Part shown: one piece after another, positions 14,649-56,505 of the stretch
Position numbering within the stretch: the first letter of the stretch is position 1
Layout: every line of letters begins with the position of its first letter
DNA from: Bispira polyomma
Lineage: Eukaryota
DNA length: 64,000 bases
Assembly: GCA_965649765.1 (NCBI GenBank)
Contig: OZ287761.1
Span: 3,658,001 to 3,722,000 of the forward strand
Reading direction: 5' to 3'
Notes under the pieces: model-generated
The model's input: only the letters and a program-made list of their open reading frames with translations
Told to the model about the DNA's origin: nothing
Database searches by the model: none
Position numbers and translations under genes: made by a program

Positions 14649-14922
14649 CTCTTTATGTTGCGTGGATTCTGCACCCTCGGCAATCAACTCCGCGGCACCT
14701 TCCTCTGGATACAACTCATGGGAGGTTAAGACTCGGGTAGTTTCACGGCCCCTGACCGACGGGTGGGCCAGTTGGTACTGAATCTCCTCATGAGATGTCT
14801 TCTCAAAGCCTGGAGCATCCACAGTATCTTCTGTGGTTTCTGCTCTGAGCTGAATGTCATCCATGCCGGCAGTTTTCTGAAGCTGCCACTTCACGTCGGC
14901 CATTTGAACGGTTTCTTCGAAC
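14649..14922 (-). CDS. Exon with diverged repeat units (FEETVQMADVKWQ...STQHKE)
   Basis: tcgtag acceptor phase 2, GAG|gtattt donor phase 0. Confidence 0.85.
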
Positions 14923-15559
14923 CTACGACAGGGAATTTTGATACAATAGAATCTCTAGGATTTCTTCAGTTAATAAGAGGGTTCGTTAACTAGAATTAAA
15001 TATTTTTTGCATAAAGAGATAAGAAAATGTGAACAGTTTCTTCAAACCTACAAAAGGAAATTCATAGAGTAGAATCTATGATCTGAACGTTTTGGGAGAT
15101 AAAAAGGTTTTCTTCAGTGCAAGCTAACGTCATTGTGTTATACTGTTAACAGTCTATTTATACAGGTGACCCCATTTTTCACTTAAATAGACCTGTGTAT
15201 TTAAGACCTTGTGATCACCACACCAAACTCTCTGCAGCCAATACTTGAACCAGGGACCTTATGATCACTAAACCAACTCCTGAAAAACCAATGCCGTTTC
15301 CGAACCCTTTTTTCATCAATCTCATCAATCCCCCCCCCCCATATGTTCCCATTATTCTGTGGTTTACCCACACTCCTTTGTTTGTCAATCCTAACTTCTT
15401 CCACTATTTACTCATTTAATCAATATCATATACCCACTGTTTACCCACACCTTTGTTCATCATTCTCAAGATTCCCTCATGTTCTCATTATTCTTCCAAT
15501 TACCCACCTCTGTTTGTCCATCTCAAGTCACCCCCCCCCCCCCACCCTCTTGCACTGAC

Positions 15560-15803
15560 CTCACCAATCTCTCATATCTTCCATTTACCCACCCTTGTTC
15601 ATCTATCTCCAGTTCCTCCACCACTTCCTCCTCGTAATCCTGCGTCTCCGTTTCCTCCTGGATCTCTTTGCGTAGTTTCTCCATGTTTTCCAGGAACCTC
15701 TGTGTCTTGGACTGGAATTCAACCTCGTCCATGGAACTAGACGAGATGACTGATTCGGCCTGAGAGGCGCTGGCCTCTTCACTGTCAGGCACGTATTCAA
15801 ACA
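15560..15803 (-). CDS. Acidic exon (FEYVPDSEEAS...RYERLV)
   Basis: ttccag acceptor, AG|gtcagt donor; phase 1-2. Confidence 0.88.
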
Positions 15804-16286
15804 CTGGAAATATTTAAAATACCGACGTAAATATGGTGTCAATGACAGACTCGTCATGAGATGCACTATTACACCTAAAATCAAAGATCAAAATCTTATG
15901 ACTAAAACTTAGTTAAAACCAAGACCTTTTATGAATACGGCCACTCGTTTCCCAAACCAATAATTCAGTTTGTCACAATATGACCACAAAGATTTTGAAA
16001 ATTAAATACCTAGGGCTGTAAAAGAGTACTCGTTAAAGAATTGAGTAATCAAATAAGAAAGTAAAAAATTAGAAAAAAAGGAGCACTCTTTGTCAGTAGA
16101 TTTAGAAATATTCTCATAAAATTTATCTCAATCGAGTCATATTCTACCATTTTAAAAAGAAAATCATGCAAGTTCTGGCTATTTAAAGAGTAGAGTAATG
16201 GTACTCAGGTACAAAACTTACTACTCGTGGCAGCTCTAGAAGTACTCCAAATAAACCTAAATTCCTACTCTTATCTACCCACTTAC

Positions 16287-16697
16287 CTTCGACCTGTAAG
16301 AAGGCCCTGGATGTTGCTCTGCCGTACTTGTTGAGGGCAATACACTCATATTTGCCCGTGTCCTGTGGGAACACCTCCAGTATGTGCAGTATACACTCCC
16401 CGGACTCGCGGTCGTAGTGCGTCTTAAAGTCAGGGTTGTCCACAACCAGCTTGCCGTTGTGGTACCATGTGACCTCGGGGATTGGGTTTCCTGTAACGCG
16501 GCACACAAACTTGACCTCTTCTCCGTCCATGACCTTGAGAGGGTTGAGTTCCCAGATAAATCTAGGTGGCGACCCTTCAAGGTGGATCTGGAACTCCTGA
16601 CGCTGGGCCTCGATCGCCTCGATCTGCTTGGATTTGTGGATCTTTAGGGCGCTGGTCTGACGCTGTGTAGTGGTGAGGTCGACCTCCATCTTTACAC
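16287..16697 (-). CDS. Linker + complete Ig (SPPRFIWELNPLKVMDGEEVKFVC...)
   Basis: tttcag acceptor, G|gtaagt donor. Confidence 0.93.
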
Positions 16698-17233
16698 CTG
16701 AAATATGTATATTGTGTTTGAGAGACATATCTATCTACATCTTAACACCTGGAATACATTAACACACCTGTAATATAAGGATATGTAAGGCGCTGGTCTG
16801 ACACTGGAGTACGTATAGATAGATTTAATGTACTAATCAGGTCCACTTCCATCTTAACACCTATAATATATACCTTGTATTAAAAAGAGACAGGTCTGCC
16901 TCCATCTTAACACCTGGAATACATGAATACACCTGTAAAATAAGGTCAACCTCCATTTTAACACCTGGAATACATTAACACACCTGTAATATATAGATCT
17001 GAAAGGTGCTGGTCTAATGCTGTGTACTAATCAGGTCAACCTTCAAAGAGTTTACCAACAAAATATGGGGACATCCATTCCTTGTACTTTTCGCCTAGAT
17101 ATCACCTACAATTTTACTATATAATTCTTTCTGTCAATTTTACTTGGTTTTTTGGTCAGTTTCAGGCATTTTTTTGTCAATGATTTAGCACAATGTCTAG
17201 TATTGTTCCTCAATTTAACATCACACAATGTAC

Positions 17234-17452
17234 CTCTTGGAGCTCCTCTTTGCTGGACGGTCAAGGACGTACTCTTCTTCTCCTTAGGAAGGGCAAAGGT
17301 CATGGACACGGGTTTGTGACGTGTCTGATCAATGGCCAGTGTCTCGGAGTAACGTCTTTGTTTGGAGATCGGCATCTGTAGGGTTTGACGCTGGGTCACT
17401 GATGCTTCGGCTCTATGCTTTAGGTCGATGATCTTCTTCTCCGTGAAAATAC
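17234..17452 (-). CDS. Unique-sequence exon (IFTEKKIIDLK...RRYSET...RGAPR)
   Basis: ctccag acceptor, G|gtacat donor; phase 1-1. Confidence 0.85.
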
Positions 17453-18117
17453 CTGGAGAAAAATAAAAATACACAGATAGAAATAACACAGTTTTTTCAT
17501 TTCAAGAAAGCAATTACCTTAGTCAGAAAAATTATGATGCCACTTTCTAGTCTATTAAAAAAAATTGTGTACGTCTTTTATATCGCAGCAGTTATAAACT
17601 GAAGAGTACCTATCTCTTACCGAAATGTGTATTTATATTTTGATTATTTATATTTCAAAGATTCAAAGTTTGTTTCGTCATATATATTTGTAAAGCATTT
17701 TAAATGTGCTGTTAAAAACGTTTAGACTGGAAGGTGGTACATCGGCGATACAGCAATTTTACTTCCGCCAAAACATCTGCATCTACTGCTCGGTTTGTTT
17801 GTGTCACCAGGATCACTTCATTTATTTATTTATTTATTTTAATTTAGGTGGGTTTATACTACCTCTATCACCGCACTCATTACCTGGTCATTTCCACTTG
17901 TTTTCTACCTGTATCAACACACTTATTACCTGGTCATTCCACTATTTCTACCTATATTAACATACTCATTACCTCCATTTTGAGGTTTCAGCTGAGATTG
18001 CTGCTGGAATATAACCTCTGTCTCTGCTGTAGCTGAAACTCTCCAAACTTATCGTTACCTGTATTAACACATTTACCTGGTAATTCCACCCGTTTCTACC
18101 TGTATTAACACTCATAC

Positions 18118-18372
18118 CTGGTAGTTCCACCTCCATTTTGAGAGGTTTTGGCTGAGGTTGCTGCTGGAATATGACCTCCGTCTTCGACAGCCGTCTCTCT
18201 GGAAGTCCAAACTGTAGCTGAAACTGCCTGAACTTCTCCTTGTGGTCGATAGAGATGGTCTCGGAAAACCTACGTTTCTCCGTCACTTGAATGGGTTCCA
18301 CGGTCTTCACCACCTGGGTGGTCTTACTAACGATCTTCTCGGTGCCTTCTTCATCAGAGGACGAGGATGGTA
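18118..18372 (-). CDS. Unique-sequence exon (PSSSSDEEG...RRFSET...KMEVELP)
   Basis: tttttag acceptor, G|gtatga donor; phase 1-1. Confidence 0.88.
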
Positions 18373-18805
18373 CTAAAAACACAGAAGAAAATAGGAAACT
18401 CCATTATCCAAGCATGTAGAGAGAGCAAGATTTTATTCAGATACTAGAAGGTTGACCAAATAGAACGAGACATTTCTGTCAATAAAAACAATAGGGAAAT
18501 CTTAATTAGAGAGAACGAAATGAGTCCATAAAATCGAATAATTGGATAAGAGAAGTTCAGATAATAGAGGTTCTACTGGATTTGTCTGGTACTCAAAGTA
18601 CTAATTAACCCGAAGCAATAACTAACCTTTTCCTGATTGTCCAAGTAAAGCAAACTTAGGAACCAGTTTATAAGACCAAAGCAAAATAATCTAATCGCAC
18701 AAGATATATGATCATAATTTGTACCTACACATAAACATTTGGCAGTATATATGTATGATAACATACATAAACATACATGTAGTGGATATGCCCCGCTTGT
18801 AAATA

Positions 18806-19157
18806 ACCATACTTCATACTTACATCTCACAAACATATGTCAGTAAGTCACCATACCTTACATACACAAAACCATACTCCATACTTACATCCCACAAACA
18901 TATGGCAGTAAGTCCCCGCGGCCCAATACTTGTTCTCTGCCTTCACCATACCTTACATGTAACCATACTTCATACTTATATCTCAAAAACATATGGCAGT
19001 AGGTCTGTATTTAATACTTACATCTCACAAACATATGGCAGTAGGTCACCGCCGTATATACTTGTTCTTTGCCTTCACCATACCTTACATACATATATAA
19101 CCATACTTTATACTTACATCTTAAAAACATATGACAGTAGGTCTATGTTTAATACTT
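18806..19157. repeat. Tandem degenerate copies of the exon 19160 donor junction
   Basis: atacttacatctcacaaacatatggcagtaggtc repeated ~5 times. Confidence 0.9.
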
Positions 19158-19159
19158 AC

Positions 19160-19996
19160 ATCTCACAAACATGTGGCAGTAGGTCACCGCCGCCCCATAC
19201 TTGTTCTCTGCCTTCACCATATACTCCCCCTCATCCTCGGGGAACACCTCAATGATCACCAAGGTGCTCTCCTTGGTCTGTGTGTCCACAAAGATCTGGA
19301 AGTCCCTGCTCGGCTTGATCGGCTGGCTGTTGAAGTACCACGTGATCTTGGGGTTCGGGTAACCTTGGTAACAGACCCTAAACATAGCCTGGTCCCCATC
19401 GTTGACGGTGAGGTCGCGGAGGGGCAGGGTGAACCTCGGGGGCTCAAACTCGGGTATCACGGCGCAGGGTTCAGCCATCTGACCACCTGGGCCAGGTTGA
19501 CCTACACCTGGCGGTCCATGAAAGGCCGTCTGCGCCTGAGGTGCCGTCTCGGGACGAATCGGGCCGTCAACCATATCAGGAGCACCGGGTACTCGGATGG
19601 GACCGGTCGGTGCTCTGATGCGGACGTTTAAGATGGTCCTCGTGTGGCCTTCACCCAGTGGGTTCATCGCCTTGACGATATACTCTCCTGCATCCAGTGG
19701 GCTGGCATTGTTGATGGTCAGTGAGGTCAGACCTTCTTCATTGAGAATGGTCGTTCTGACGGTTGACAGGATCTCCCGGCTGTTGTGAAACCACTGAATC
19801 CGTGGCTCTGGCTCAGCTTCCACGAGACACTGCAGCGTGATCGTGTCCCCTTCAAGGACGTCCATCTGAGGATTCAGAGGTCGGGTGAAGGTCGGCGAGT
19901 TCTCAATGATCCTCGTCTCCTGTTCCCCGACCACCGTGACCTTCTCTTTCTTCACTGAGACGGTTTTCTCGGTGATGGTGACGTCGGCATTGGCAG
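19160..19996 (-). CDS. Two Ig domains with Pro/Gly-rich linker
   Basis: gtccag acceptor, T|gtaagt donor. Confidence 0.93.
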
Positions 19997-20491
19997 CTGG
20001 ACAAAACAGAAGAGACGAGAGAAACTAATTAAAACTGACATTGAAAAGCAGGCTTGTAAAAATACAGTAGATTCTATGAAACTTGAATGTGCAATATCCA
20101 TAGGTGAATTGGGTTCTACTTATACCTAAATTTTATTAACTAGTATTTCTACATGTTGCGACCAGAAAATTTTGATTTAAATTTAAACTTACACTATTTG
20201 TAGTTACATTAGAATCTACTGTATTAACTAACATGGCTGAGCTGTAGAATTCACTGACAGTATATATACATATATATATAGCCATATTTGTAGTGTGTTC
20301 ATATCTTCAGACATTTGAGAAGATTTTGGCACTTTAAATATCACAGAATTTAGTTTAGTCTCCATATCACACTATACATTTTCACAAGAACCCAAAACAT
20401 CAAAAGTGTAATGTACATATTCCTCCTATGCATTATTAGGAAACTCAAATACTGTTATTCACAAACTTACTAAATAAATACTCAGAAGACC

Positions 20492-20736
20492 GGGGCTGAT
20501 ATTCTCAAACATATACTCAGCTTAAAGTCACACTCAACTCAAATCTAGATTCTCTGTAACTCTGGATACAACAAAGATATCTAAAATCTAACTTCATATT
20601 TGAATTCAGTGTTGGAAGCTCTATTAAAATGCATGGTCACAAGTATAGGTTATTTTCATGTACAGGGATTTCCACATGGTCTATATTTGAGTTGAGTATG
20701 AGTTTAAGCTGAGTATACGTTCCAGAATACGGCCCC
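20492..20736. mobile_element. MITE with GGGCC-type TIRs (PIF/Harbinger-like); inverted copy at 59814-60055
   Basis: ~60-bp imperfect TIR tattctcaaacatatactcagcttaaa...tttaagctgagtatacgttccagaata. Confidence 0.78.
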
Positions 20737-21078
20737 AAGACACCAGAAATGTGAGTTTGAAACTCAAATATTATCAAACACACACAACATGTAGTACAGA
20801 AGGATAGTTGTATTTGTCTTTTGTATTTTTAACGCGCCTTACTGATGCAAGCGCAACGACAGGAGCAATTAACCAATCGAGAAGTCCCAAAAAATACAAA
20901 GCCAAGTAGGGTTTTAAAGTGTATATTTTTTAATACATATATTGTGTCAGTTTAAAGTGTCCATCTTAAGTAAAGCAGAAGACAAGATGTACATCTTGTA
21001 CTATTCAGCAGACCATAAATAAATGGCTCAGTGCATCTTGTAGAAGAAGTGAACATACAATGCTTTAGTAAAAACCCC

Positions 21079-21390
21079 TGGTGCCATATTCACTAATAGA
21101 CTTGGCAAAGTCTTAGGCTTAAATCTATCACAACAGTATACTAGATGTAAGCCCAACACTTGGCTTAGTCCGTTAAAAGAGATAAGTCTGAACCTTGTCT
21201 TAACATTTTGGTCTTTGATTTTTGCTGAAAAGGTTAAGATTTTGGTCTTAGTCCCAGTGACAGTAAGAAAAGATCTTTAGTTAGTGTTAACTTTGCACTT
21301 AACACTAAGACTAACAGTAGGCAGTCTTAAATATTTTAGACATAGATGTTAAGACTAAGTGAAAAGCAAGACCTTTTGTGAATACGGCCC
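21079..21390. mobile_element. MITE family with gggccgtattcac TIRs (also 28970-29068, 35305-35541, 60060-60500, 60625-60826)
   Basis: Shared TIR and cttagtctta sub-repeats. Confidence 0.75.
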
Positions 21391-22519
21391 TAACAAAAAA
21401 TTACAACATCAATGCAAGCTACACTGTAGTTGTACAAAAGTCGATACAATCCTGACTTATTTACCATGATGTTACACTAACCGTCATTTGAGCTTTGACC
21501 TTGGTTTTTGTGACCATTGGCATATTTGGATGTAAAAGATCATGCTTTTTATCCTGACCTTCATTTTCAACTTTGACCGTGGCTTTTTTTGGCAGCAAGT
21601 TTAAGGCGACAATAGTGGAGATTTAGCAGACTATAAGTGTTATGAACTGAAGTGATTGCACATAACACTACTGAACTGAGTGATATAAGGTCTCAAGGAG
21701 GGATGGACCAAAGACAGATCCAATTTGTAGGGCAGGTCTGGCATTTTAATCATTGTATTTTTTACTTTGAGGCCTTGGCAGAGGTGTGCACTCCATTGAG
21801 TGGCCGTCATACTACAATACTAAAGTATCATGTTACAAATTTAATGTATAAAATTTAAAATGTATAACTGAATAAAATCAATTTTATTCTAATTAATAAT
21901 TGGGTGACACTGAACAACAGAGTGAATGATTGTACTACAAAGCAACTTATAAAACTTATAAAAACCAATACACTAAAACAAAATAAAGAAATTATTATAA
22001 TGTACAATATATACTCTAACATAGCTATAGCTATATAAAGTTATAAACTGTAACATAAAGTAACTAAAATTATAATCCTGAGACATTCATTGAGAGCAAG
22101 CCTATATCTATTGCTGCTTCTAAATGGTTAATAGACACACATTCTATACACTAGTAATACAATCAATACAAATTTTAACACTGATTCCAGACACAAATAT
22201 CAGTTATTGAAAGGTCCAACAGCTGATATATAACAAGTTCTCTAAATACGAACATACATGAAAACACAAACATTTAAAACATCCATATTTCCTCACATAC
22301 TACAACATAAATTATAGTGGAAATTTTTTTAGCCAGAATTAAAGTTTCAATTTAGCTTTAAATTGATATTGTCAATAATATTTAGTCCACATTTTCACCA
22401 AAACTGATTACCACAAGAAAGAGTTCAAATGAATTTTCCAGCCTGAAAATTTCAATGTATACATAATTCTATGCAGGCCCCCACTTTCACATAGCCTTCT
22501 AGAATTCAGCTTTTAAAAT

Positions 22520-22831
22520 GTTAGTGCTGGCTTACACAATCACTGGTCTCTCACTTATGTTAGTTCGAATTCTGTTCATTCCTTCATGTGGGAAAGTTTG
22601 CCTGGTACTTTGCTGTAGGAGCGATGGTTTACAAGTGTCTTTCAGCACTGGTTTCTTCCACCATTGAATCTGGATATCGTGATTGAACAGTGGAAAAAAA
22701 CCAGTGCCAAAGCACTATAAACCACTGACCTACAGTAACTGATAACCTTCCCACATTAAGGAAACAAATTGGATTCGAGTCCATATTGGTGACAGGTAAC
22801 ACTTCTAAGCGCTAGGCCACCGCGGTGCCTC
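22520..22831. mobile_element. Inverted pair of SINE family 1 copies
   Basis: + copy 22520-22685 followed directly by - copy 22690-22831. Confidence 0.8.
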
Positions 22832-23143
22832 CTAAAATGTGTTACAGATACACAACCATGCCCCCCCCCCCCTAACCCCTTACGGTGATTATTAACTATA
22901 TTACTTTAAATTTACTAGGGAGACTTGTGAAGCAGGGACTTAGGCCTAGGCACATATTCACTTAGCCAAGTCTCAGGCTTAAATCTAGCACAAAAGTATA
23001 TATTAGATTTAAGCACTTGGTGGCTAATTCCGTTAGTGAATACAGACGGGCCTAGGAATACAACACTAACAAATACCACATGGAGACAATGACAACACCA
23101 TCACAACAACAACGGACATCAACAACATCTCACAGATACTCAC

Positions 23144-25507
23144 GCACAACCACTAAGTTTGCAGTACAGCAGGCTTTGCCCGCAGGGTTGACCGCCTCAC
23201 ACACAACACTGGTCACATCCTGACCACTCGCCCCTTCTATCACTAACATACACTGCCCCACTCCTCCCCCCACCGTCTCCCCCTCCCAAGACATGTGTAC
23301 TCGGTGAGATTCCTGTATCGGCGTCTTTGTCTGCACAGCCATATCATCCCTTTCTCCTTCAGTAGTATACTCTTTATCCAGACATAGATCCCAGTACCAT
23401 GTGACCCGAGGTATTGGCGACCCCGTCACCAAACCTCGGAAGACACACGTCTCGCCTTCCTTCACGATCTGCGGCTGTATGGGAGTCAGGAAGTGAGGAG
23501 GCTCCATCTTGTGGCCTTGAACTTTGATCAGCCTCGTCTTGTGTGTGCCAGTTTTGATCTCCCCGACAACCTTGCGTTCGATCTTCTCACTTCCATAAAC
23601 AGTGGTTTCGACGGTATGCAAGGTCACTTTGCCCTTTTTCTCTTTCGGTTCTTCTTTCGCATTGTTCTCTTGAAGCTGTTCCTTTTCAGATCCGCTCGAT
23701 ACCTTGTTTGTTGTCATCTTACTATGAGTGGTTGTCTCCTGTTTTGACAACTCAGAACTCGTTTTTACCATTTTCTTTATGGTGTACTCGTGGGGTACTG
23801 GTACTGTTGTCGTTAGCGATACATGTCTCTGGGGTTCAATCCTTCCCACTCTAGGCTCCTCCAGCTTGGTCTTTAATATCACCTTTCTCACCTGTTGTTC
23901 TTTTGAGTCTTTTGTCAGTTTTACAGGTACCACTTTACTCCTGTCGGTTTCTAGCTTGGAAACGACCATCCGTTTTTTGGTGGCAGGAGACACAAACTTG
24001 GAAAAGACAGATCTGTGGGTGGATGTGTCGGGCAACGAGAGACTTCTGGGGTATCTATCTATGTGAATGGTTTCCGAATCGGAGAAGTAATTGTCCAAAC
24101 TCAGGTCTCTTCTATACATTGATTCACACTTTTTCTTTTTCTGAGTCGTTTTCTCGTAATACTCTCTTGTCTGTATCTCGTATTCATCTCGGTCCGAATG
24201 GCGTCCAGTGGCAGAAGACTGGTCAAGGTGTGACGACACTTTATGCCAATACACTTGACCGTGTGGCTTCATAGCATCGGGATAATTACCCTCTTCATCC
24301 TTCCTTATCCAAGGTTCCCCATGCAGTACGTCACTTGCCTGGTTTAGTTGTTTGGTCGGTTGTTTAGCTGGTTTTACGATCGTTTCTTGGTACCTCTTTC
24401 CTAAAGCTTTTACCATCATTGGTCTAGAAGGTAATCTTTCACTGTATTTCACATCTGATTCAATTTCTGAATGTTGTTTGGTCGGTTGTTTAGCTGGTTT
24501 TACGATCGTTTCTTGGTACCTCTCTCCCGAAGCTTTACCCATCACTGATCTATGAGGAAATCTTTCAATGTTTTCCACATCCGATTCAATTTCTGAATGT
24601 TGTTTGGTCCGTTGTTTAGCTGGTTTTACTATCGTTTCTTGGTACCTCTCTCCGGAAGCTTTAACCATCATTGGTCTAGGAAGTAATCTTTCACTGTATT
24701 CCACATCTGATTCAGTTTCTGAAAGTAGCATGTCTTGCACCTTTCTCTTATTAGCTGGCTTCTGACTTCTGGATTCCATAATCTTCTCAGTATACTTCCC
24801 ATCATCCTTCAGTTTGCTGTATACTCGATGCGTTGTTATTTCTTGCTGCTCTGACTGTTCGGCTGACGACATCTCAAGGTATTTCTCATCTCTCCTCTCT
24901 TCTCTATCTGCCCCGACATCGCCTATGGCAACGGGTACAGCCAGCCAATCAGATTCTCTTCCTCCGTGGATATCGTCTCCCCCTCCCTGTATATGGTTTA
25001 CATTAAGCTTCACTCCTCCACTCTCTACCAACTTCTCGACTTCCCTATCCTCCCCGTCATCACTGGGGTAGAATCTCATCCCACTTTCATACACCATGGA
25101 GTTATTGTCCGTATCGCTGAGTCGTGCCAGCTCAGAGGAATAAGAGTAGTCACTCTCAAAGCCCACAGGGTTATGGTAATAACCCTCTTCGTATAGATCG
25201 GGGTTTGGCGTGACCTCTAACTCCGCAGCCGAGATGGCTTCACCAAGGTCGTTCGTGGCCATGCATTTAAACAACCCTGTGTCTTCGGGGAAACACTCGT
25301 GAATGACCAGTTGACAATGACCCGTGTCCACGTCTTGGGTGATGCCGAAGACGCCCTTCCGCTTGTCTATATACACATTATTGTGGAACCACTTGATCTT
25401 GGGCGCTGGGTCGCCGTGGATGACGCATGACAGCGTCACATGATCACCGTCCATGGAGGTCAGTGGCATAAGTTCATGGATAAATCGAGGCGGACTTCCG
25501 ACCTTGC
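23144..25507 (-). CDS. 2364-nt symmetric exon: Ig + unique linker with 42-aa repeats + atypical Ig
   Basis: 818-aa ORF; catcag acceptor (weak), C|gtgagt donor; phase 1-1. Confidence 0.88.
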
Positions 25508-25614
25508 CTGATGCTTTAAAGTGACACACATAGAGGAGGTCAAGATAGATTTCTAGGGCTGGTATATTCCCCAAACATCTTAACACTCAAACTCAGACTA
25601 TTCATCATCTAATC

Positions 25615-28155: not shown

Positions 28156-28176
28156 ACTGGACATTAGGATAAGATA

Positions 28177-40172: not shown

Positions 40173-40175
40173 TAC

Positions 40176-43162: not shown

Positions 43163-43172
43163 CTGAAAAATA

Positions 43173-45197: not shown

Positions 45198-45199
45198 AC

Positions 45200-45388: not shown

Positions 45389-45424
45389 CTGTGGAAATAG
45401 GCAAGTAATGGAATTTAGCTTTGA

Positions 45425-45647
45425 TTTTGGTTTTTTACATTACATTCACCATTTTAGATCATTTCATGAAGGTCAGATTTAATGGTGGAAGAAACTAGTA
45501 CTGAAGCCACTGTGTAAAAATCACCAACTTATGGCAAGTACCTGACAAACTTTTTCTCACACAAAGGAACGAACAAACAAGATTTAAACCCACATTGTTG
45601 AGAGGCTAGTGATTGTGAAGCAGGCACTTCTAGCCATTAGGCCACCA
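45425..45647 (-). mobile_element. SINE family 1
   Basis: Matches other copies. Confidence 0.85.
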
Positions 45648-46025
45648 TTGGTCTACCGCTAAGCAAGAATGTACAATGTGAATGCTTCGATCTAATCACA
45701 GGCACAACTTGTTAGAGCTGTTGGACAATGTAAAGAAGGTCTATATTCACTAGGGGCGGTATTCACAAAATGGTTAAGCCTGGATTTTGTCTCAGATCTA
45801 GTATACTTTTGTTCTAGATTTAGGACAATGTCTAGACTTTGCCCTTTCATTAAAACCGCCTCAGCTGTTTTTGCAATCTTTACAACAAGACAAAGTCACT
45901 CATTTTCCCTTTGTGCACTTGCTGATCTTTTACAGAAAGTATTGAGCTGTGGGACAATATGCCTATAAAACTAACTAACTAAGCTACCCTTGTTTGAGCT
46001 GAGAAACCTTCACAGATAGTCTTAC

Positions 46026-46157
46026 CTGGGGTTGCGGCGATCTTACAAGAGAAGGTCACTCCCTCGCCCTCATTCACTTGCTGATCTTTGAGAGGAAGTA
46101 CCAACTGCGGTGCTTTCTCCTCCCCAGAGACAGGGGTTTTGGTGACGTCACCTTGGC
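46026..46157 (-). CDS. Ig N-part (KAPQLVLPLKDQQVNEGEGVTFSCKIAATP)
   Basis: tttgtag acceptor, G|gtaaga donor. Confidence 0.9.
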
Positions 46158-46586
46158 CTACAAATAGAAAATGATGGGAATATTACAAGTTGTTAATGTT
46201 GTTACTGTTAAAGTAGGAAGAAGCTTGTGATCAGAGTTCAGTCATAACCAGCAGACGAACGTTAAGGTGGAAAAGCCAGTTGATACAGGTTGATACAGGT
46301 GTCTTTTAAGCATTTTCGTAAAACACTTTTGCGCCTGTAATCTGGGAGACTATTTCATTCAGCAGATGCTGCAACTTTAAATGATTTTGTAAATGTAGAC
46401 ATAAAATGAATTACAATCAGAGAATTTGTAATATTTTATTGGTACAGATTGTCAATTTCATGAGAAGTTTTTGAAAAGTTGCCTGTTTTGACATCTGTGA
46501 TACATGAGCAGTGATCGATTTAATTGTTAGAGTACTGTCAATCAATTAATTTATTATTTGATTAATCAGTGCAGCCTGCTACTGAC

Positions 46587-46752
46587 CTTGTACATTGAGT
46601 TTAGCAGTACACGTGGCCTTTCCTAGCTTGTTGACCACGATACACTCGTAAGCCCCACTGTCCTCTACACGCACCTCGTAGACCAGGAGAGTGAAGTGGT
46701 CCTCCTCCACGATAAACTTCCAGCGTTTACTCTCGTACAGCCTCTTGCCGTT
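46587..46752 (-). CDS. Ig C-half (NGKRLYESKRWKF...EDSGAYECIVVNKLGKATC)
   Basis: Manual translation; ctaacag acceptor, G|gtcagt donor. Confidence 0.9.
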
Positions 46753-47129
46753 CTGTTAGTTAGAAAAACATTATAGTAGAACGGGAGCTCTATTTACTGA
46801 ACAGGCTGGGGGAGCAAGGTGTTATGTTTGGATAATATAGCCTCTTATCATTGTGTTACACAGGAAAGGTTTTATATTTGTATTTAAATTTTAAAATGAC
46901 CGTACTGTTAGTTAGAATAACATTAAAGTAGAACAGGAGCTCTATTAACTGAACGGGTTGGGTGGGGTTTTGTTTGGATAACTGAAGGTTCATAAAATTG
47001 AAGTGGCATTTTAGAATGGTAACTCGTAAAGATTTTTAAAAGATCCTGCAATTGGAAAAATTTATCCTTTTGTAAGATCAATAACTCCCCTCCTGTTAAA
47101 TGGAATTTTAATAGGTGCAGTATATAGAT

Positions 47130-47388
47130 TTGAATTTAGGTCATATCACAATGGCCAGATTTGATAGGGGAAGAAACCACTGACCTACAGCAAGTACCTG
47201 AAGGAACTTTTGGTTGGACCGTATATCATAACAGATAGACAAGATACTAAGTAGAGTACACTACCGACCTATGGCAAGTACCTGACAAACTTTCCGATGT
47301 AAAAGAACAAACAGGATTCAAACCCACATTGGTTAGAGGCCAGTGATTCTGAAGTAGGCACTTCTAACCAATAGGCCACCGTGCCCCC
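47130..47388 (-). mobile_element. SINE family 1 fragments
   Basis: Head at 47388 plus internal domain. Confidence 0.75.
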
Positions 47389-47523
47389 TCTTATAACTAA
47401 GAATGTACAATACGACACTGTATCCACCATAGGACACAAGTCACACTCATTATAAAGCATGCATTTTACTTTAACAAAAATATATTTTAAGGAAATTCAG
47501 CAGTGGGAATCAGTTTTACTTAC

Positions 47524-47660
47524 CTTAGCCCAGTAGACTTCAGGCCTAGGACTTCCACTAATCTGCACATCAAAGGTGGCTGGCTCTCCAATACTGATAT
47601 TCAGGTCGCGCATCTGGACCTTAAACTCAGGAGCACTGTCTCTGACTTTACTGGTGTCTT
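47524..47660 (-). CDS. Ig N-half (SAPEFKVQMRDLNISIGEPATFDVQISGSPRPEVYWAK)
   Basis: Manual translation; ttgcag acceptor, AAG|gtaagt donor. Confidence 0.9.
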
Positions 47661-48453
47661 CTGCAATAATAAGATGTTAGTTTATGCATATTTACAGTAT
47701 CTTTCTGTAATAATTAGAAGTTTATTTATTTGTGTCTTCTGTGATAATTATATGTTAATTTAAGCACAGGTGTCTCTTTTCTGCAATAATTAGTTCTTAA
47801 TTTATGCACATTGGTGTATCCTAAAATAATAATATGTCGCCCCCGGACTAGGTCGGCTTTATATAGAGGCAGCAACTCGATAATCTATTAGTATGGGAGG
47901 GAGCGCAGCAGCAAAATCAGTTACACAATGAACTTTAACTTACAAATGTTAAGCGAACTGCTGAGTTACTGAGTCGCATCTATATTTAGAGGTGAGAAAT
48001 TTGTCAGTATTGATTCTAAAGAAAGGGCAATTGATGTCGTCCCTAGGTTTTTGGGGGGTTTGCTGACTGATGTGATACATAAAAGAATCCTTTATCACTC
48101 TCAGGCTAGATTTACACATCTATGTGTACAACTTGCTTTCTTTCTTTTGACATAACACTGATTCTAATTTGATTCACTTAGCCAATAAAAAAGTAGTTAT
48201 GATATAAAAAAGGTTCAATAACAAAATCCCTGTTATCACGGCATGACCCGTTAACATAAAATTTAAGGGTCAATTCTTAATTTTGGCAGTCATCAATCAT
48301 GCGCAAGATTGAAGGGTTTGTACAACAATGGCTAAGAACGGTGTAAAATTGAAAATATAATATGTCTGCATAGATCTGACCCCCTAGATCTTCAATTTGT
48401 GCATACTTTGTCAAATTTCTACTCAAATTTAAGCACACAGAATCTCTGCTCAC

Positions 48454-48671
48454 CTAGAACAGTCAAGCTGGCCTTGCATTCCGCCATACCAAACTGGTTA
48501 CTGATCTTGACTGCAAACACGCCAGCGTCTTCTGGAAAGACCTCGGGTATCAGCAGGTAGCTCTTGTTGTTAAGTGTGGTGATCTGGAAGTCATGTGACG
48601 GCTGGATCTCCAAGCCTTCACGGAACCACTGTACGTTTGGGTAGGGGAAGCCGGTGAAGTTCACCTCAAGC
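48454..48671 (-). CDS. Ig domain body (LEVNFTGFPYPNVQWFREG...VFPEDAG)
   Basis: ORF track plus cccag acceptor and G|gtgagc donor. Confidence 0.92.
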
Positions 48672-48719
48672 CTGGGCAGATAGACACAGAGAAATTTAAT
48701 TTGAATTAAGTAGTATTTC

Positions 48720-49032
48720 ATCGTTTTGATCAGTTTAAGTTATATCACGATGGCCAGATTGAATGTTGGAAGAAACCAGTGTTGGAAGAATATAGTTGTA
48801 TTTCGAATTTAGTTGGATTTTTACGATGCTTTCAACAACTTAGGTCATATCGCAACGGCCACATTCAATGGTGAAGGACACCAGTGCTGAAGCCACTGTA
48901 AACCACGGACATACGGGCAAGTACCTGACAAACTAGGCCACATGAAGGAAAAAACAGGAATCAAACCCACATTGGTGAGAGAATAGTGATTTTGAAGCAG
49001 GGCGCTTCTAACTACCAGGCCACCGCGGCCCC
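48720..49032 (-). mobile_element. SINE family 1 (full copy plus extra tail)
   Basis: ggggccgcggtggcctggtagttag head. Confidence 0.85.
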
Positions 49033-49228
49033 TCTAAATGTAAGGACACAGGGTAAATTCTAGAATTCACTGGTGACATGGCACGGCTGTATAGAAAATA
49101 GTTCTTCCTACAATCAATGCATTAATGTTTAGTGTTATCCTATAGAAGACTGTTTCAGAGTAATAGGTGCTATAGAAGTTACTACATTATATTTAAATCA
49201 CATCACAACACAAGCATTCACTACTTAC

Positions 49229-49355
49229 TTCACAAGCTGTCCTTCCTTTGCCTTCGTGTTCATCAACGGCTTGTTTAACGTGGGAGGAGCTTGTGACTTG
49301 GCTGACTTGGGAATTCTGGGAACTTCCGTCTTGCGATCGTGTTCAGCTTCAAGAC
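49229..49355 (-). CDS. Linker + Ig start (QAPPTLNKPLMNTKAKEGQLV)
   Basis: tctgtag acceptor, AA|gtaagt donor; phase 1-2. Confidence 0.88.
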
Positions 49356-49581
49356 CTACAGACAAAACAAAATTTAATATTTAAATGAGAGAATACCCGA
49401 CCTATACACAAAACAAAATACTGGCAAAAAACAAGGGAATTCTGGGAACTTTTGTTTGCGATCACGTTCTGCTTCCAGACCTACACACAAAAGAATCATT
49501 AAAAAAAATCATTCTCGAAACCAAGCCAGCATGGTGACAGCAAAAATACTTCCCTACCATCGCTCCATTTAAATTTTTATT

Positions 49582-49810
49582 TGAATTTAGTTGGGTTTTA
49601 CGTAGCTTTCAACAGCTCAGGTCATATCTCGACAGCCAGATACAACAGTAGAAGAAACCAGTACTGAAGCCACTGTGTAAACCACCGACCTGCAGCAAGT
49701 ACCTAACAGACTATACCACTTGAAGGGACGAACAGGATTAAAACTCACATTGGTGAGAGACCAGTGATTGTGAAGTTCATGCTTCTAGTCACTTGGCCAC
49801 CGCTGCCCCT
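49582..49810 (-). mobile_element. SINE family 1
   Basis: Full length. Confidence 0.85.
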
Positions 49811-50062
49811 ACCAGTAAAGTAAATTTGCTCTATTGATTTTTTGACCTGTGAGCCAGTTAGCTCGAATGACCACTTAAAATGGCGGTCGTCTGGAGCTGA
49901 GTTCTATCTGCTGTGTCGGATTAAAGATCCTTGGGGGCGTTGATAAATGGTCATCCTTAAGCCTCGGCGTCAATAGTGGCTGCCCATGAAAAGTGCATTT
50001 GAAATGACCTTATGTTGTATAAGTGTGCCATAACAAATGTCATATTTCATTTCATCACATAC

Positions 50063-50239
50063 CTAACATGTACTTAGCCCTGTCTATATGTACTTCCGAC
50101 GCAATGTGAATGTTGGGTTCGTGGGAGCGTAGCTCTTTGGATGCCTCGGTCTCCTTGAGTTCCGAGTGTCGGAGGTTGATGGCGTGGTAGGCTTCGGTCA
50201 CTTCCTCATCTTTGTACATCAAGGCTTTCTCTTGGCCGG
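50063..50239 (-). CDS. 177-nt unique-sequence exon (GQEKALMYKDEEV...)
   Basis: ttcatcag acceptor, G|gtatgt donor; phase 1-1. Confidence 0.78.
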
Positions 50240-51076
50240 CTGATGAAAGAGGTAGAAACATGAGGAAGTTTAAACATGACTACAGGTACGATTATGTTAC
50301 ACATGGGCCAGTGACTGCCTATGGTCCATAGCTTTCTAAATCACTGCCACCATGTTATGGAATAGTTTCCCAGTTGAACTTACATAACTTGAAACACTTT
50401 CTGGGTTACATCTACAGTTTTTTACTTCTAATTATTTCCCACATCAGCCATAAAAATGTATTAATCTTTCTTGCTATATCACCTTTATTACTTCACTGTA
50501 AAGCAAAGATTTATAACATGGCTTGTAATATTTCTTCATATGTTGGACTTCACATCCTTTATTGTTAGAACATACAATGCTTCTTACTATTATTACTAGT
50601 TTCTTGCTATTATCTGTGAATGTTATTATGTTAACACGATATTTTATTCAAACTAAACAAAAGCCATGATTTGTCCTATTATGAGAAGTTTCAGAGATAT
50701 TTGGACCTACAGGTAAATGTACTAAAAACTTTAAGTGGGAAGTCCTTTACAAAAATACACCCATTCTATTTTTGAAAACCAAAACGAAGTTAATTATTAG
50801 TTATAGCTTGATATTGTTTTCATTCTAAAAAAAGTGCCGCATTCTTAGAAAATATGCAAGGCCTTCATGGATTGGCTGTAATCATCGACCTGTCCGAACT
50901 GAGGGGTGTCAGATTTATTGTTATAAGGCGCAATCTGGAGCCTGAGTATAATATAGTGGCCATATCAACGTCAGTGTATTTCACACTGTGCGCCGATGTT
51001 GACGCCGATGTCAACTCCTGTTTCTAATATACTTTTACCGAGCAGCTTTATTTCTCAGTTGAACTTTTTCAAGCTA

Positions 51077-51262
51077 CAGTAGAACCTCTATTATCCAACC
51101 CTCTATTATCCAAATATTCTATTTTACGGACTAAATTTCACTCTCCCAAACCTGTTTTTTTGCTATATTTCATACTAAAATACCACTTCTATTTTACGGA
51201 GCTTCTATTATCCAAACAAATTTTTACCCTCCCAAGATGTCCATAAAATAGAGGTTCTACTG
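51077..51262. mobile_element. Same MITE family
   Basis: TIRs; reverse complement of 61730-61913. Confidence 0.82.
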
Positions 51263-51405
51263 AAAATGCATTCTTCAGTTTATTTTCATAGGATGGAGTT
51301 ATATATTTAATATTTTTCAAAACTGTGAACGAACTTCCCAGGTTCCACACCCAGTTTATTCCAAGTTTATCCCCACTGTTTTCAAATAATTCTACAGTAC
51401 ACATA

Positions 51406-51967
51406 CAGGTGTGGACAGCTTAGCGGACTGTAAACAGCTTAGCGGACAGTAACTTAAAATGTACACAGTTTAACAGTTAACAAGTAATCTGACCCGTTTT
51501 GAATGCAAAGTCTTTACTTTAACGAAATCATCTGCAGAAGCGCCCACTGGGCGAAACGTCGAAATTAGAGAGAAATTGGGGGTGGGCGATTACGTGAGCA
51601 TTGGCCATTATGATGTAGGATGCCAGCAAAAAAGGTCAATAAACTGCGTCATACCCAAAATTACGTGGGTTGTTTATGTTGTAAACACTTGACTAAAATA
51701 ATATAATATGGATGTATTAGTTGGGGAAAGTAGTATTTATTAGGTAATTAAATTATATATTACTTTTGGTACGTATTTTTGTGTGTAAAAATGGGTGTTT
51801 AGAAGCTTTTTAGCACATTTTTTTGGGGGGTGGGCAATATTGTGACATAGAGCGTTTCCGCAGATGATTTCGATATATTTTACAGATGGCTTTTTAAATG
51901 CAACAAATTTTATGTTTTAAGTTACTGTCCGCTATCGCTGTCCCGTCCGCTAAGCTGTTCACCCCTG
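51406..51967. mobile_element. TA-flanked TIR element with an inner inverted-repeat element (51523-51872)
   Basis: cagg..gacagcttagcggac...gtccgctaagctgttcacccctg; inner cgaaatcatctgc...gcagatgatttcg. Confidence 0.8.
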
Positions 51968-52034
51968 TAATTTACTGACAACACAAGGCAAAACAACAAT
52001 AAAACTTATAGTGGCCTTTGCAGACAACACTTAC

Positions 52035-52154
52035 ATCTCTCCAGCGCTCTCAGTTCTGTTACCGTGGTTCTCGGCTTCCTGAATGCCGAGCCTAACTCGG
52101 TGGAGCGTAACTCCACTCCCCGACGTTTGTGGTTCAACTCAACCTCCACGGCGG
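52035..52154 (-). CDS. 120-nt symmetric unique-sequence exon (AVEVELNHKRRGVELRSTELG...)
   Basis: CTAAC branch point, polypyrimidine tract, cttgtag acceptor, T|gtaagt donor; phase 1-1. Confidence 0.8.
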
Positions 52155-54881
52155 CTACAAGAAAACGAGCAAGCAAACGAGTGCATCGGTTAGTGTGTTG
52201 TGTGACATGCAGCAGCAAAGAAATACACATATAAACAACAGATTTTACACAAACAAACTTCAACAACAAACATTAATAGCATTTTGCTCTTTCTCCCATG
52301 TGTGTGGTGTCTAGTATCCAGTATCCGGTAGTTGGTGGACAATTAGACATGTGCTCAATTAATCGTCGGTGATACTGCATGATCGTGGCCGATCAGTCTT
52401 AATTTTTGAATAATAGATTATACACCAAATACTGTTCCTAACTTCAACTAGTTTTTATGGCAAATAAAGCAATTTTTGTCACTTTTACGTTTTGTTTTCG
52501 TTTATGGCCATTGTTTGCTGGAAGTTATATAGGTTAGCGGTAGATACTAAATATCCAACATCTGAATCCAACCAAATTCTTACAGGATCACAATACATAT
52601 TCGTCCCAGGATGGCATGACGATATACCTTAGATATCTCAAACAATAGAATTTGGTGGATAATCGATTACAAGTCGATCATCGGTCGGACAATAAAGCAA
52701 TTAATCGACCTGTGAAATACAGACCAATTTCCAACACTAGTGTCCAGTATCCGGTCAGTATGTTGTGTACAACAGAAACATGCAAAAAATGAGTATACAC
52801 AGCGACATTTGTTTAACTACAGTAAAACTTGGGTAACTTGTATGTAATGATGTCATCAGCAGTCAAAAAATGGCATCACGATATCACCAGATTTTTATGG
52901 TGATATTAATATCATGATTAAAACTATGTATGTAAAATTCTTTTCCAAAAATTTGTTGGTTTCATTTATTTACATTGTACTTTTTTGGAATTCTTTTATA
53001 TTTATTTAGGAAATACTGACATTTTTACCTAAACTTATACCTTCTCTCGATGATGTCCCGATATCGTGGTACACGATGACGTCTCTAATTGTATGTAGCC
53101 AGTGATTATACGAAACAAAAAGAAAAATCATCTTTTTGTCCATTCAATTCATCTGTTTGTCTATTCACATACAACATGCTTTTACTTTGACAGTTATCAC
53201 TAGTACACGTTTTACTGTATGAAATTCCTCTGTGTTTTAGTTTTGGGTTTAACGTATCAGAATCAGCAGAAAATCGTATTAGGGTAGTTACTCAATCTTT
53301 TCTCATCTGCAAACCACCGGCCTTTAGCAAGTCTACTGCTAACTTTTCCAAACATATGGCAGGGCTAAGTTTTGAACCCACGACAGCAAAGGTGGGTGGC
53401 AAGTGTCTGTCACCAGTACACCACAGAGGCCCCCTATTAATAACTACGCATCACTAGTATATAAAGGAAATCAACTCTGCTGCAGCTTTTACTTTTAAGT
53501 ATTGTGGATATAGGTGTATATAGCTACATTGAGTAAATGCCGAAACAAGCTACAGATTTTTTGAGAATGAACTGTTTGCTATTTGTGACATTACGTGTTC
53601 CAAAGGTCAAATTAAGGTCAAATCGTTAACTGTTAACACTGCTATGCAGCAAATGATATTAAATATTAACTTCATCTTGTATCTGGGTCTTGACTCATTG
53701 GTCAAGCAAAATTCTTTAAACACATAGTCAAAATTGAAATATGGAAATTAAATATAAAGATTGTTAAAGATATTGGCATAACTCGAAGATCAACGTAAGT
53801 TCACAAAATAATTGTTTAAATGAATGTACTCTTTCAAATAAAACGATGTTTCAACAATAGACTATTGTGATATGGTGTAAAAGCAGAAATTTTAGGCTGC
53901 AAAAAAATTAATTCTGAACTTCTATGAAATTCAGTGGAATTAATCTTCACTATTATCCAAATCTTTAGTTGTAAGATCAATACAAAATTTGACTGTCACT
54001 GCGAGTTTATTTTATCCATTTAATCTCTTATAGCTAGCAATTATATTTCCCAGTGAAAATTTTTTCCACTTTTACAATAGTTCAGCCAGGGTTCATATGT
54101 ACGAGCCAAATACACCGGGCTTCCATAAAATGGCTGTGGGATTAAATATATATACTGATTATACAGATGTATATATAAGAACAATACAAAGTGCATCAAA
54201 AAATACATGGAACAACAACATTTAAAACAAGGGATAAACTAAATGACATGTAAACTTTACAAAACCAAAATAAAATAAAATAAAAAATATTCTTGCTTTT
54301 TACTTGGAAAAAACCATCAGTAACTCAAAATTAACAACACTTTGTGAATTCATAGCGATCAAGCACTAGTGACTACATGGAGTATATACAGATAATTTGG
54401 GCTAAATTTTTTTTGGGGGAAATTCACTAGACAGGGCATGACCATATTGAAAAAAGTAGTTCTCCCTACTATTACAGCATTAGGGTTTTTAGTGTTACGT
54501 ATCTATACACTAAATCCAATATGGTTGCTTCCCTTTCGAGTGAATTATAGAATCATTTCCAGAACTCACTACACACGCCACGGTCAAAATGAAAAGTAGT
54601 TTGTCCCTACTCTCATGGCATAAGGGGTTTTACTGCTGTCCTTTAGGGGGATCAGGAATATGTATTCATACGCCAAAATTAAAGATGGCCGCGCCCTGTC
54701 CAGTGAAACGTGGAATCTTTATCAAATTTGTTTTTTTTTTCTTTCCAAATGCGTATATACATATCTTATTAATGCTTGCACAACATAAACTTTGCCACAA
54801 CAAACTTTTGTGCGCTAATTAACTCATACACAGTTTACAAGCATCCCCGCGGACACAACAGCCAATCACATTAGAGCTTAC

Positions 54882-55068
54882 ATTTTGGAGCCTGTTTCAG
54901 TCTTGACCTCCAGTCCTCGTGTGGGATCACTACAAGGGTTGTCGAGCATTCGGCCTCTCCCAGTGGGTTCTTGGCAACCACTCGGATGGTTCCGTTGTCA
55001 TATTCACGTACTTTAGGGATCTCTAACACATTGATCATTCCATCGTACCTCAGTCGGAATCTGTTACC
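54882..55068 (-). CDS. sls: Ig C-half resembling the last kettin Ig (GNRFRLRYDG...EDWRSRLKQAPK)
   Basis: aaacag acceptor phase 0, T|gtaagc donor. Confidence 0.9.
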
Positions 55069-55344
55069 CTGTTTTTTTATATACAAGACAGAATATAAGG
55101 CATGGGTAGAAAGTTCTATTATCTGAACCCCTTAATGGGGGACTGATTGAATAATAGAATGTCCATAAAATAGGAAATTTCCAGAACATTGATCACACCA
55201 TGGCCATCCTTCTGTCTAAATCTACAACCCTGTTTTATTACAATAACAAACACAAGTTATTGCAGAATTCTATAATATTTTGGATATTTAACATCCACTC
55301 TAGTAACTTTTAGTAGGTTATATTGGGACGGGTTTTTTTTTTTA

Positions 55345-55540
55345 ATTTGGATATTTAACGCCCACTCTATTACCTGTTTAGGTTATATTGGGATGGGTAG
55401 TTGGAAACGCTGGAGGAAACACTGCATACAGTCGGTCAAGGTTCTGCACTGAAACCAGCGGCCCACAGTAAGGAACTACTACCTTTCCCACATAGGCATC
55501 GACGGGATTCGAACTCATGCCGCCCAGAGGTGAGAGACTT
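55345..55540 (-). mobile_element. SINE family 2 (other copies 7388-7545 and 56970-57166)
   Basis: Near-identical dispersed ~190-bp repeat with B box gttcgaatccc and A-rich tail. Confidence 0.8.
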
Positions 55541-55981
55541 CTATAATATTAATAGGTGGGGTTGCAAGCATCGCAGACCACTGTTTTTGGTATTGATGGA
55601 AAGCTTGGGCCCCAAAATTATTTAATCTGATATTTGTGTACGAGAGATAAACTGTTTTGAATGATAAGATCTTCATCAAACAGAGGTTTTCTCACTGTAA
55701 CACGATGGTTATAAAAGTTACAAAATCCTAAAATTCAGTAGAATGGTCTTACTTACCTTGACAATCATGCTTCTATTGAACCAACAGGTGAGTCTGGGAC
55801 AGGGATGACCACTGACTGTACACATCAACTTAACCATGTTCCCTTCTCCCACCCCCTCCCTGTTACTTATATTTTCAGCCAATCAAATCGGCTGTTACTG
55901 ACACTGACATTTTTCAGCCAATCAAATCGGCTGATAGTTACACTAACATATTCTCAGGCAATCAGATCGTTTGTTACTTAC

Positions 55982-56247
55982 ATTGAAAATCATGCTTCCG
56001 TTGACCCACCAGGTCAGCCTGGGACGGGGATGACCATTGACTTTACACATGAACTTGGCCGTGTCCCCTTCCTCCACCTGGCTACTTTCTGGCACGAGGT
56101 CAAAGACCGGAGGGGCCGGCTCGGGTCCCTCCTCGATGTATTCCTTCCTGACGTTATCTCTGCGGATCTGCTCCTCCATCAGGTGTAAGTTCATCACGCT
56201 CTCTTCCCCCTCAGGAAGCTGAGTGTCGGTAATCACGGACTCTTTGC
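55982..56247 (-). CDS. sls: Kettin linker + Ig N-half (KESVITDTQLPEG...KFMCKVNGHPRPRLTWWVNG)
   Basis: aatag acceptor, AAT|gtaagt donor. Confidence 0.92.
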
Positions 56248-56505
56248 CTATTTGGGGGGTAGAAATTTACACATTTTAAATGACATTATCTTGACCATTA
56301 GGAAGGTGGGTGTCGGTATTTACAGACTCTATTGCCTATTGTGGGTAAAAATTACACGTACAGTCAAACCCCTTTAAGTGGAATTATCTGTTAGGCAGAA
56401 GTTATTTTAAGGTTGAATTATCTGTTAGCTAGAAGTTATTTTAAGGTCCCATTATGAACCTTTAGGGTATTTACATACAATCAATGTGTACAATCTATCA
56501 CATAC

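What the first reader, a model, noticed from the sequence alone, without database searches (positions are those of the whole stretch)
14900..56360. Systematic 'splice-junction echoes': about half of the exons are shadowed by degenerate intronic copies of their own junction
Seen: 15 of the 30 exons between 14.6 and 62.2 kb (14649, 16287, 18118, 19160, 38404, 39257, 40176 both sides, 43892, 45200, 46026, 46587, 47524, 49229, 54882, 55982 both sides) have 30-110 bp copies of their edge in the adjacent intron. The copies are always direct and almost always span the splice site. Donor copies lie downstream and acceptor copies upstream, with 1 to ~25 copies each. By eye, deep intronic DNA shows few comparable local duplications. 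Inference: this is either a duplication process focused on exon-intron boundaries (co-transcriptional, R-loop or repair-linked), or survivorship of junction-spanning tandem duplications. Either way it creates reservoirs of decoy splice sites and a route to new exons. I do not know of a named system for this and could not search the literature.
Basis: partly seen in the sequence, partly recalled or inferred. Interest (0 to 1): 0.9.

Follow-up and report, generated by a model that had tools for sequence, protein, structure and literature searches.

The report
Tandem copies of exon-intron junctions ("mirages")
In this animal about one splice site in six has been copied, together with a piece of its exon, into the neighbouring intron; such repeats are already named ("mirages", from amphioxus) and the copies here decay like junk, but they are several times commoner than ordinary intron duplications, which suggests short duplications start preferentially in exons.

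Summary
In this titin-like gene 15 of 57 splice sites have direct, junction-spanning copies in their own intron. None lie on the exon side or inverted, against 3-4% at intronic control positions. Sixteen dynein genes elsewhere in the genome give 35 of 244. Short-read contigs carry the two echo clusters they cover. Such repeats are the "mirage" minisatellites described at single loci in amphioxus (PMC3087553, PMC3902484). They also occur in Elysia (5/32) and a closer relative (3/62). The copies look neutral: decoy GT decays at background rate, periods ignore reading frame, and at amino-acid-changing differences the relative never sides with the copy (0 of 36). Polarity follows from geometry plus selection. 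What remains unexplained is the excess: outer breakpoints are 6-fold (23-fold for young-looking families) denser in the last 60 bp of exons than in introns, beyond the roughly 2-fold I estimate from persistence alone. Best reading: DNA-level duplications born and amplified preferentially in exonic DNA, visible only where the extra copy is spliced out. The scan noted this pattern before in many other windows of this genome. No RNA data were available.

The parts
8626..62147 (-). Host gene: titin/sallimus-like giant protein with I-set Ig domains and long E/V/P-rich exons (the gene continues beyond these limits)
   Evidence: ORFs; phases; Pfam I-set; best solved-structure matches are titin; orthologous exon edges
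14902..15077 (-). Acceptor 14922 and one upstream copy (offset 125, 82% identical); the relative has a different 51-bp x 24 array at the same acceptor
15306..15616 (-).
16638..17045 (-). Acceptor 16697 with about 4 upstream copies (51-bp period in part)
   Evidence: identical in short-read contigs
17859..18183 (-). Donor 18118 with about 4 downstream copies (41-46 bp period; one longer 128-bp copy)
   Evidence: identical in short-read contigs of runs X1 and X3
18800..19221 (-). Donor 19160 with about 6 downstream copies (138-156 bp and shorter periods)
38041..38439 (-). Donor 38404 with one old copy at offset 241-270 (74%), interleaved with dispersed-repeat pieces
39401..39559 (-). Acceptor 39410 with one upstream copy (offset about 125)
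39867..40241 (-). Donor 40176 array: 94-bp then 78-bp units carrying 66 bp of exon; no match elsewhere in the genome
40380..40867 (-). Acceptor 40393 with one short copy 461 bp upstream, separated by inserted sequence
43172..43380 (-). 34-bp x 6 array abutting the acceptor at 43162 (polypyrimidine tract only, no exon bases)
44313..45227 (-). Donor 45200 array: about 35-37 bp x about 24 copies, 22 bp of exon per unit, with internal subfamilies; no match elsewhere in the genome
45885..46100 (-). Exon-interior piece 46045-46100 copied into the downstream intron without the donor
46748..46981 (-). Acceptor 46752 with one upstream copy (offset 152)
47647..47820 (-). Acceptor 47660 with 2 upstream copies (78-bp period)
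49309..49495 (-). Acceptor 49355 with upstream copies (offset 125)
55028..55255 (-). Acceptor 55068 with one degraded upstream copy at 55186-55255
55749..56078 (-). Donor 55982 with a 105-bp copy at offset 225 and a 39-bp triplet
56202..56357 (-). Acceptor 56247 with one upstream copy (offset about 87)

Best explanation
These are mirage minisatellites, neutral by-products of DNA-level tandem duplication. Step 1 (shown): a 40-150 bp stretch with one end in the exon (median 24 bp in) and the other in the intron is duplicated head to tail. Step 2 (inferred from geometry): the copy next to the exon stays the working splice site and the extra copy is spliced out, so only this orientation survives; duplications wholly inside constrained exons are purged. 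Step 3 (shown in outline): some pairs grow into arrays of up to about 24 units, most likely by unequal exchange, with copies next to the live exon usually the most similar to it. Step 4 (shown): the intronic copies decay without constraint while the live exon changes only at silent sites. Step 5 (inferred, the weakest): the excess over intron interiors arises because such duplications begin and amplify more often in exonic DNA, most plausibly through recombination or repair events that start in exons. Junction-spanners are the visible remainder of an exon-wide process, not targets of the spliceosome.
For: Genome-wide occurrence: 35/244 dynein and 15/57 titin sites, donors 25/151 and acceptors 25/150. 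Outer breakpoints per kb: 2.4-2.5 in exon -60..-5, 0.6-0.9 in the first 100 intron bp, 0.33 deep; ratio 5.9, rising to 10 and 23 for higher-identity families. Junction position in the unit roughly uniform (mean exon fraction 0.44, KS p=0.09). Arrays of 2.5 or more copies: 34/51 spanning against 8/45 intron-only families. Proximal copies more like the live exon in 16 of 21 arrays (p=0.01). Non-synonymous mismatch 0.46-0.50 of the rate for two free copies, as expected if only the copy is free. The relative matches the live exon at 31 non-synonymous differences and the echo at none, but splits 15 live to 12 echo at silent ones (p=2e-5). Two units tested are unique in the genome. In-frame exon-internal repeats (135, 126, 114 bp) survive in low-constraint titin exons. 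Precedent.
Against: The exon-origin bias is deduced from survivors; the rate inside exons cannot be measured here. GC content explains little (intron positions of 38-45% GC give 2.9%). Contigs of two samples showed no allelic differences over about 4 kb, so a version that relies on high present-day heterozygosity is not supported. Rates differ between genes (0/26 to 16/64, p=0.003) for unknown reasons. Breakpoint microhomology could not be read. Only about 260 kb of a 1,035 Mb genome was tested.
Confidence: 0.55

Rival explanations
1. Splicing- or transcription-coupled origin: polymerase pausing, R-loops or spliceosome-linked breaks at exon ends in germ cells cause local re-replication centred on the junction.
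For: Intron positions within 100 bp of a junction have about twice the deep-intron rate and some arrays end at the AG. All 3 echoes in the relative's titin fall at junctions that also have one here (11 of 36; hypergeometric p about 0.02). Genes differ in rate.
Against: The rate drops sharply on the intron side rather than being symmetric about the junction. The junction has no fixed place in the unit. Donors and acceptors are equally affected. A presumably muscle-expressed gene has the same rate as an axonemal dynein (26% against 25%).
Confidence: 0.2
2. Pure survivorship and persistence: duplications arise evenly everywhere, but exon-anchored ones last longer because one copy cannot be lost or drift, while intron interiors turn over.
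For: One copy is demonstrably constrained. About a quarter of intron sequence is dispersed repeat, and one array was split by an insertion.
Against: Anchoring gives about 2-fold by my estimate; 6-fold is seen, and the excess is larger, not smaller, among high-identity families. Intron-only positions next to exons give only 1.8%.
Confidence: 0.15
3. The copies are functional: selected decoy, recursive or alternative splice sites that tune splicing or supply variants.
For: Decoy AG differs at only 4 of 108 bases against 10-14% background (copies not independent). Echo acceptors are somewhat more often AG|GT (11/25 against 33/125, p=0.09). 21 of 25 donor and 11 of 25 acceptor families hold a decoy scoring about as well as the live site.
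Against: Decoy GT differs at 12.1%, the background rate. Periods are multiples of three in 14 of 50. Exon parts decay neutrally. Most echoes are absent from the relative. Amphioxus mirages did not alter mRNAs.
Confidence: 0.07
4. Assembly or sequencing artefact, or copies of a mobile element.
For: Tandem repeats are error-prone in assemblies; the runs found may come from the assembled sample.
Against: Short-read contigs reproduce the echoes at 16.7-17.0 and 17.86-18.2 kb with no differences. Copies are 74-98% identical with a coding-shaped mismatch pattern. Two units tested are locus-unique. The pattern recurs in other species' assemblies.
Confidence: 0.01

Closest known systems
Mirage minisatellites of amphioxus (Adh3, globins BflGb6 and BflGb9, troponin C, PGBD5; PMC3087553, PMC3902484; original report Canestro et al. 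2002, not held in the library)
   Same: Tandem direct repeats whose unit spans an exon-intron boundary, at both 5' and 3' boundaries, units of tens to about 160 bp, many but not all keeping GT or AG, variable copy number, signs of array turnover.
   Different: Reported there from single genes with no genome-wide rate or control and 'mechanism unclear'. Here measured at about 1 splice site in 6 across 17 genes of a probable lophotrochozoan, with a 6- to 23-fold excess and evidence of neutrality. Many echoes here are single, spaced or degraded copies. Undisturbed splicing and length instability were shown in amphioxus but not tested here.
Internal tandem repeats at exon-intron boundaries in human segmental duplications (PMC2812944)
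   Same: Minisatellite-sized units at exon boundaries that can be spliced out or change gene structure.
   Different: A few dozen cases in young paralogs, with transcript support for new introns; here pervasive in old single-copy genes and no intron gain is shown.
Intron gain by tandem genomic duplication of AG|GT proto-splice sites (Rogers model; cited in PMC3087553; PMC4974935 seen only as title and abstract)
   Same: Duplication of splice signals gives raw material for new introns or exons.
   Different: There an exonic duplicate becomes a new intron; here existing junctions are copied into existing introns and exon structure matches the relative at all 36 mapped edges.

Membership tests
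Mirage minisatellites | Direct tandem repeat whose unit spans an exon-intron boundary | tested here: met
   50 of 301 sites; 30 are head-to-tail with spacer <=10 bp
Mirage minisatellites | Occurs at both donor and acceptor boundaries, extra copies lying in the intron | tested here: met
   25 donors, 25 acceptors, none on the exon side
Mirage minisatellites | Unit length of minisatellite size (10-160 bp in amphioxus) | tested here: met
   Median period 84 bp; 46 of 50 at or below 170 bp
Mirage minisatellites | Many but not all copies keep GT or AG | tested here: met
   144 of 176
Mirage minisatellites | Array turnover with homogenised internal copies | tested here: inconclusive
   Internal subfamilies visible in the 45200 array and a proximal-distal gradient in 16 of 21 arrays; no tree of copies built
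Mirage minisatellites | Length polymorphism or somatic instability | tested here: inconclusive
Mirage minisatellites | Normal splicing is not disturbed | not testable with these tools
   No RNA run holds this stretch; coding constraint on the live exon ends is indirect support
Transposon-derived or satellite repeat | Unit dispersed elsewhere in the genome | tested here: not met
   Two arrays match only their own locus (the tool warns that a blank does not prove rarity); probes hit non-adjacent introns at under 0.1%
Intron gain by tandem duplication | A new intron absent from relatives, made of the duplicated unit | tested here: not met
   All 36 mapped titin exon edges are shared with the relative

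The most novel reading that the evidence does not exclude
This lineage has a germline mutational process tied to exon definition (exon chromatin, polymerase pausing or spliceosome assembly) that repeatedly re-copies the live exon end into the intron at roughly ten times the background rate, so that splicing architecture steers where the genome duplicates, and the spliceosome routinely ignores rows of equally strong decoy sites.
Probability: 0.22. Interest if true: 0.8.

Novelty: new member of a known kind. Interest (0 to 1): 0.45.

Why it matters
The repeat type is known, but its origin was called unclear and I found no genome-wide measurement in the searchable library. A genome where about 15% of splice sites and 9% of intron bases in the sample are such copies makes three questions testable: where short tandem duplications start, how the spliceosome picks the exon-proximal site among equally strong decoys, and how often duplicated junctions seed new introns or exons. 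The copies also record older silent states of exons. In practice they will mislead gene annotation and read mapping in this genome.

Tried and rejected
Inverted or exon-side copies: none in 301 sites. GC content as the cause: junction probes with and without echo have the same GC, and GC-matched intron gives 2.9%. Protected exon flanks: intron-only positions within 100 bp give 1.8%. Weak live splice sites attracting echoes: donors p=0.59, acceptors p=0.09. Frame-preserving use: no excess of periods divisible by three. Exon-specific methylation: CpG is depleted in both exons (0.47) and introns (0.39). Breakpoint microhomology: unreadable because of later decay. RNA: none on record. Canestro 2002 and Gao and Lynch 2009 are not held. 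The species was not identified. Two called genes of the relative read through stops and were not used as queries.
Full report
Setting. The window lies on contig C14 of a 1,035-Mb animal genome. It holds part of a minus-strand gene for a giant protein with I-set Ig domains and long E/V/P-rich exons; the best solved-structure matches of one exon are titin, so I call it titin/sallimus-like by inference. I rebuilt 30 exons between 14.6 and 62.2 kb with continuous reading phase. An orthologous gene from a related species has AG or GT at all 36 edges I could map. The species is not identified; the best named match of a dynein exon is the bivalve Solemya at 73%, so a lophotrochozoan is likely and a mollusc is not established.

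Check of the observation. A 50-bp probe centred on each splice site was aligned to its own intron, to the exon side, in reverse complement and to other introns. In the titin-like gene 15 of 57 sites have a junction-spanning direct copy. Intronic pseudo-junctions in the same gene give 4.1% at the most generous count (p=6e-9). Short-read contigs reproduce the echoes at 16.7-17.0 and 17.86-18.2 kb with no differences; these runs may include the assembled sample.

Beyond the window. I placed 122 introns in 16 dynein heavy-chain genes by homology, independently of repeats. Thirty-five of 244 sites carry spanning echoes. Over all 301 sites there are none on the exon side, none inverted and under 0.1% in non-adjacent introns; donors (25/151) and acceptors (25/150) are equal. 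Genes differ, from 0/26 to 16/64 (p=0.003). The same test gives 5/32 in Elysia, 1/22 in Solemya and 0/26 in the relative's dynein, 3/36 in the relative's titin at a slightly lower cut-off of 30, and 2/58 in a vertebrate-type dynein filed under sturgeon and flagged by its source as possible contamination. At the acceptor orthologous to 14922 the relative has its own 51-bp array of about 24 copies.

Anatomy. Median period 84 bp, median exon part 24 bp, identity to the live junction 74-98%, 1 to about 24 copies; 144 of 176 copies keep GT or AG. In head-to-tail cases the junction lies roughly anywhere in the unit (mean exon fraction 0.44, KS p=0.09), which fits DNA-level breakpoints unrelated to the splice position. 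Donor families have more copies than acceptor families (median 4 against 1, p=0.0004). In 16 of 21 arrays the copies nearer the exon are more like it (p=0.01). Two arrays searched genome-wide match only their own locus.

Are the copies functional? Decoy GT differs from the live site at 12.1%, the same as neighbouring bases, and periods are multiples of three in 14 of 50. In the exon part, non-synonymous mismatches are 0.46-0.50 and silent ones 1.25-1.3 times the rate in the intron part, close to what is expected if the live exon is constrained and the copy is free. At non-synonymous differences the relative matches the live exon 31 times and the echo never; at silent ones it splits 15 to 12 (p=2e-5). 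The copies are therefore decaying fossils. One loose end: decoy AG differs at only 4 of 108 bases, in a small and non-independent sample.

How large is the excess? Real junctions score 16.6% against 2.0% for outermost non-transposon intronic copies and 3.6% for any membership; for high scores it is 6.3% against 0.14% and 0.95%. Counting families, outer breakpoints per kb are 2.4-2.5 in the last 60 bp of exons, 0.6-0.9 in the first 100 bp of introns and 0.33 deep inside; the ratio is 5.9, and 10 and 23 for higher-identity families. Anchoring one copy in an exon should by my estimate give about 2-fold and favour old families; I did not simulate it. GC content does not account for it. Spanning families are also more often amplified (34/51 against 8/45).

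Mechanism. Shown: tandem duplication across junctions, growth into arrays, neutral decay, and a step in breakpoint density at the exon edge. Inferred: the polarity is forced, because only the arrangement in which the extra copy is spliced out leaves the protein intact; and the excess reflects duplication and unequal exchange starting preferentially in exonic DNA, with wholly exonic events purged. In-frame repeats of 135, 126 and 114 bp inside low-constraint titin exons fit this but are weak evidence, since titins favour such repeats. A splicing-coupled process, pure persistence and a functional role are the rivals, at 0.2, 0.15 and 0.07. The lack of allelic differences between two samples over about 4 kb argues against a version that needs high present-day heterozygosity.

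Comparison with what is known. Tandem repeats spanning exon-intron boundaries were named mirages in amphioxus: both boundaries, units of 10-160 bp, many keeping AG or GT, no disturbance of splicing, unstable length, mechanism unclear, and proposed as a route to new introns (PMC3087553; PMC3902484). Related cases exist in human segmental duplications (PMC2812944). The structural features are met here; splicing and instability could not be tested. Nine literature searches found no genome-wide count, but the library lacks most subscription papers, including the original report. I found the name in the papers before consulting the scan's notes. Those notes show that the pattern was reported in many other windows of this genome, once as about one edge in six and once under the name mirage; they are leads, not independent support.

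Verdict. A real and pervasive feature, a new member of a known kind, apparently functionless, with an unexplained and testable bias in where it arises. Interest 0.45.

Noticed in passing
window 384-8015, minus strand: Ten tandem 135-bp exons encoding a 45-residue E/P/V-rich repeat plus a 60-bp exon; a 2.1-kb block (381-2479) is repeated at 92% identity, so whole-exon duplication is recent here.
   Followed up: partly
window 30676-32909, 23144-25507 and 8626-12683, minus strand: Three very large low-complexity exons; for the one ending near 30676 I placed no donor and its frame runs to a stop, so it may be an alternative last exon. An equivalent exon is present in the relative.
   Followed up: partly
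window 10103-10527, 24347-24723, 30887-31218: In-frame tandem repeats inside exons (135 x3, 126 x3, 114 x3).
   Followed up: partly
window 25604-26049: Intron-only 51-52 bp array of about 8 copies, 100-150 bp upstream of an acceptor; it does not resemble that junction.
   Followed up: partly
window 13363-13590, 27925-28152, 36036-36256, 45412-45646, 48796-49033, 49571-49810, 56770-56903, 63520-63745: An abundant dispersed element of about 230 bp, and several other short families, some palindromic (20492-20736, 59812-60055); probably non-autonomous transposons.
   Followed up: no
window 42184-42230, minus strand: A strong donor-like site with a possible very short upstream exon in an intron whose flanking phases do not require one.
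   Followed up: no
L031 (G000:C3:57553430-57556420): A 42-bp donor echo array in the DNAH6-like gene is split in two by about 2 kb of inserted repeats, so the array predates the insertion.
   Followed up: partly
G000 C8:1.22-1.24 Mb, C11:4.17-4.19 Mb, C13:27.29-27.31 Mb: Three myosin-head loci on different contigs with near-identical scores and spacing, perhaps recent duplicates; they would be a good test of echo gain and loss.
   Followed up: no
window 14500-18570: Contigs of two samples run 0.6-1.7 kb without allelic differences, suggesting low heterozygosity or one individual.
   Followed up: no
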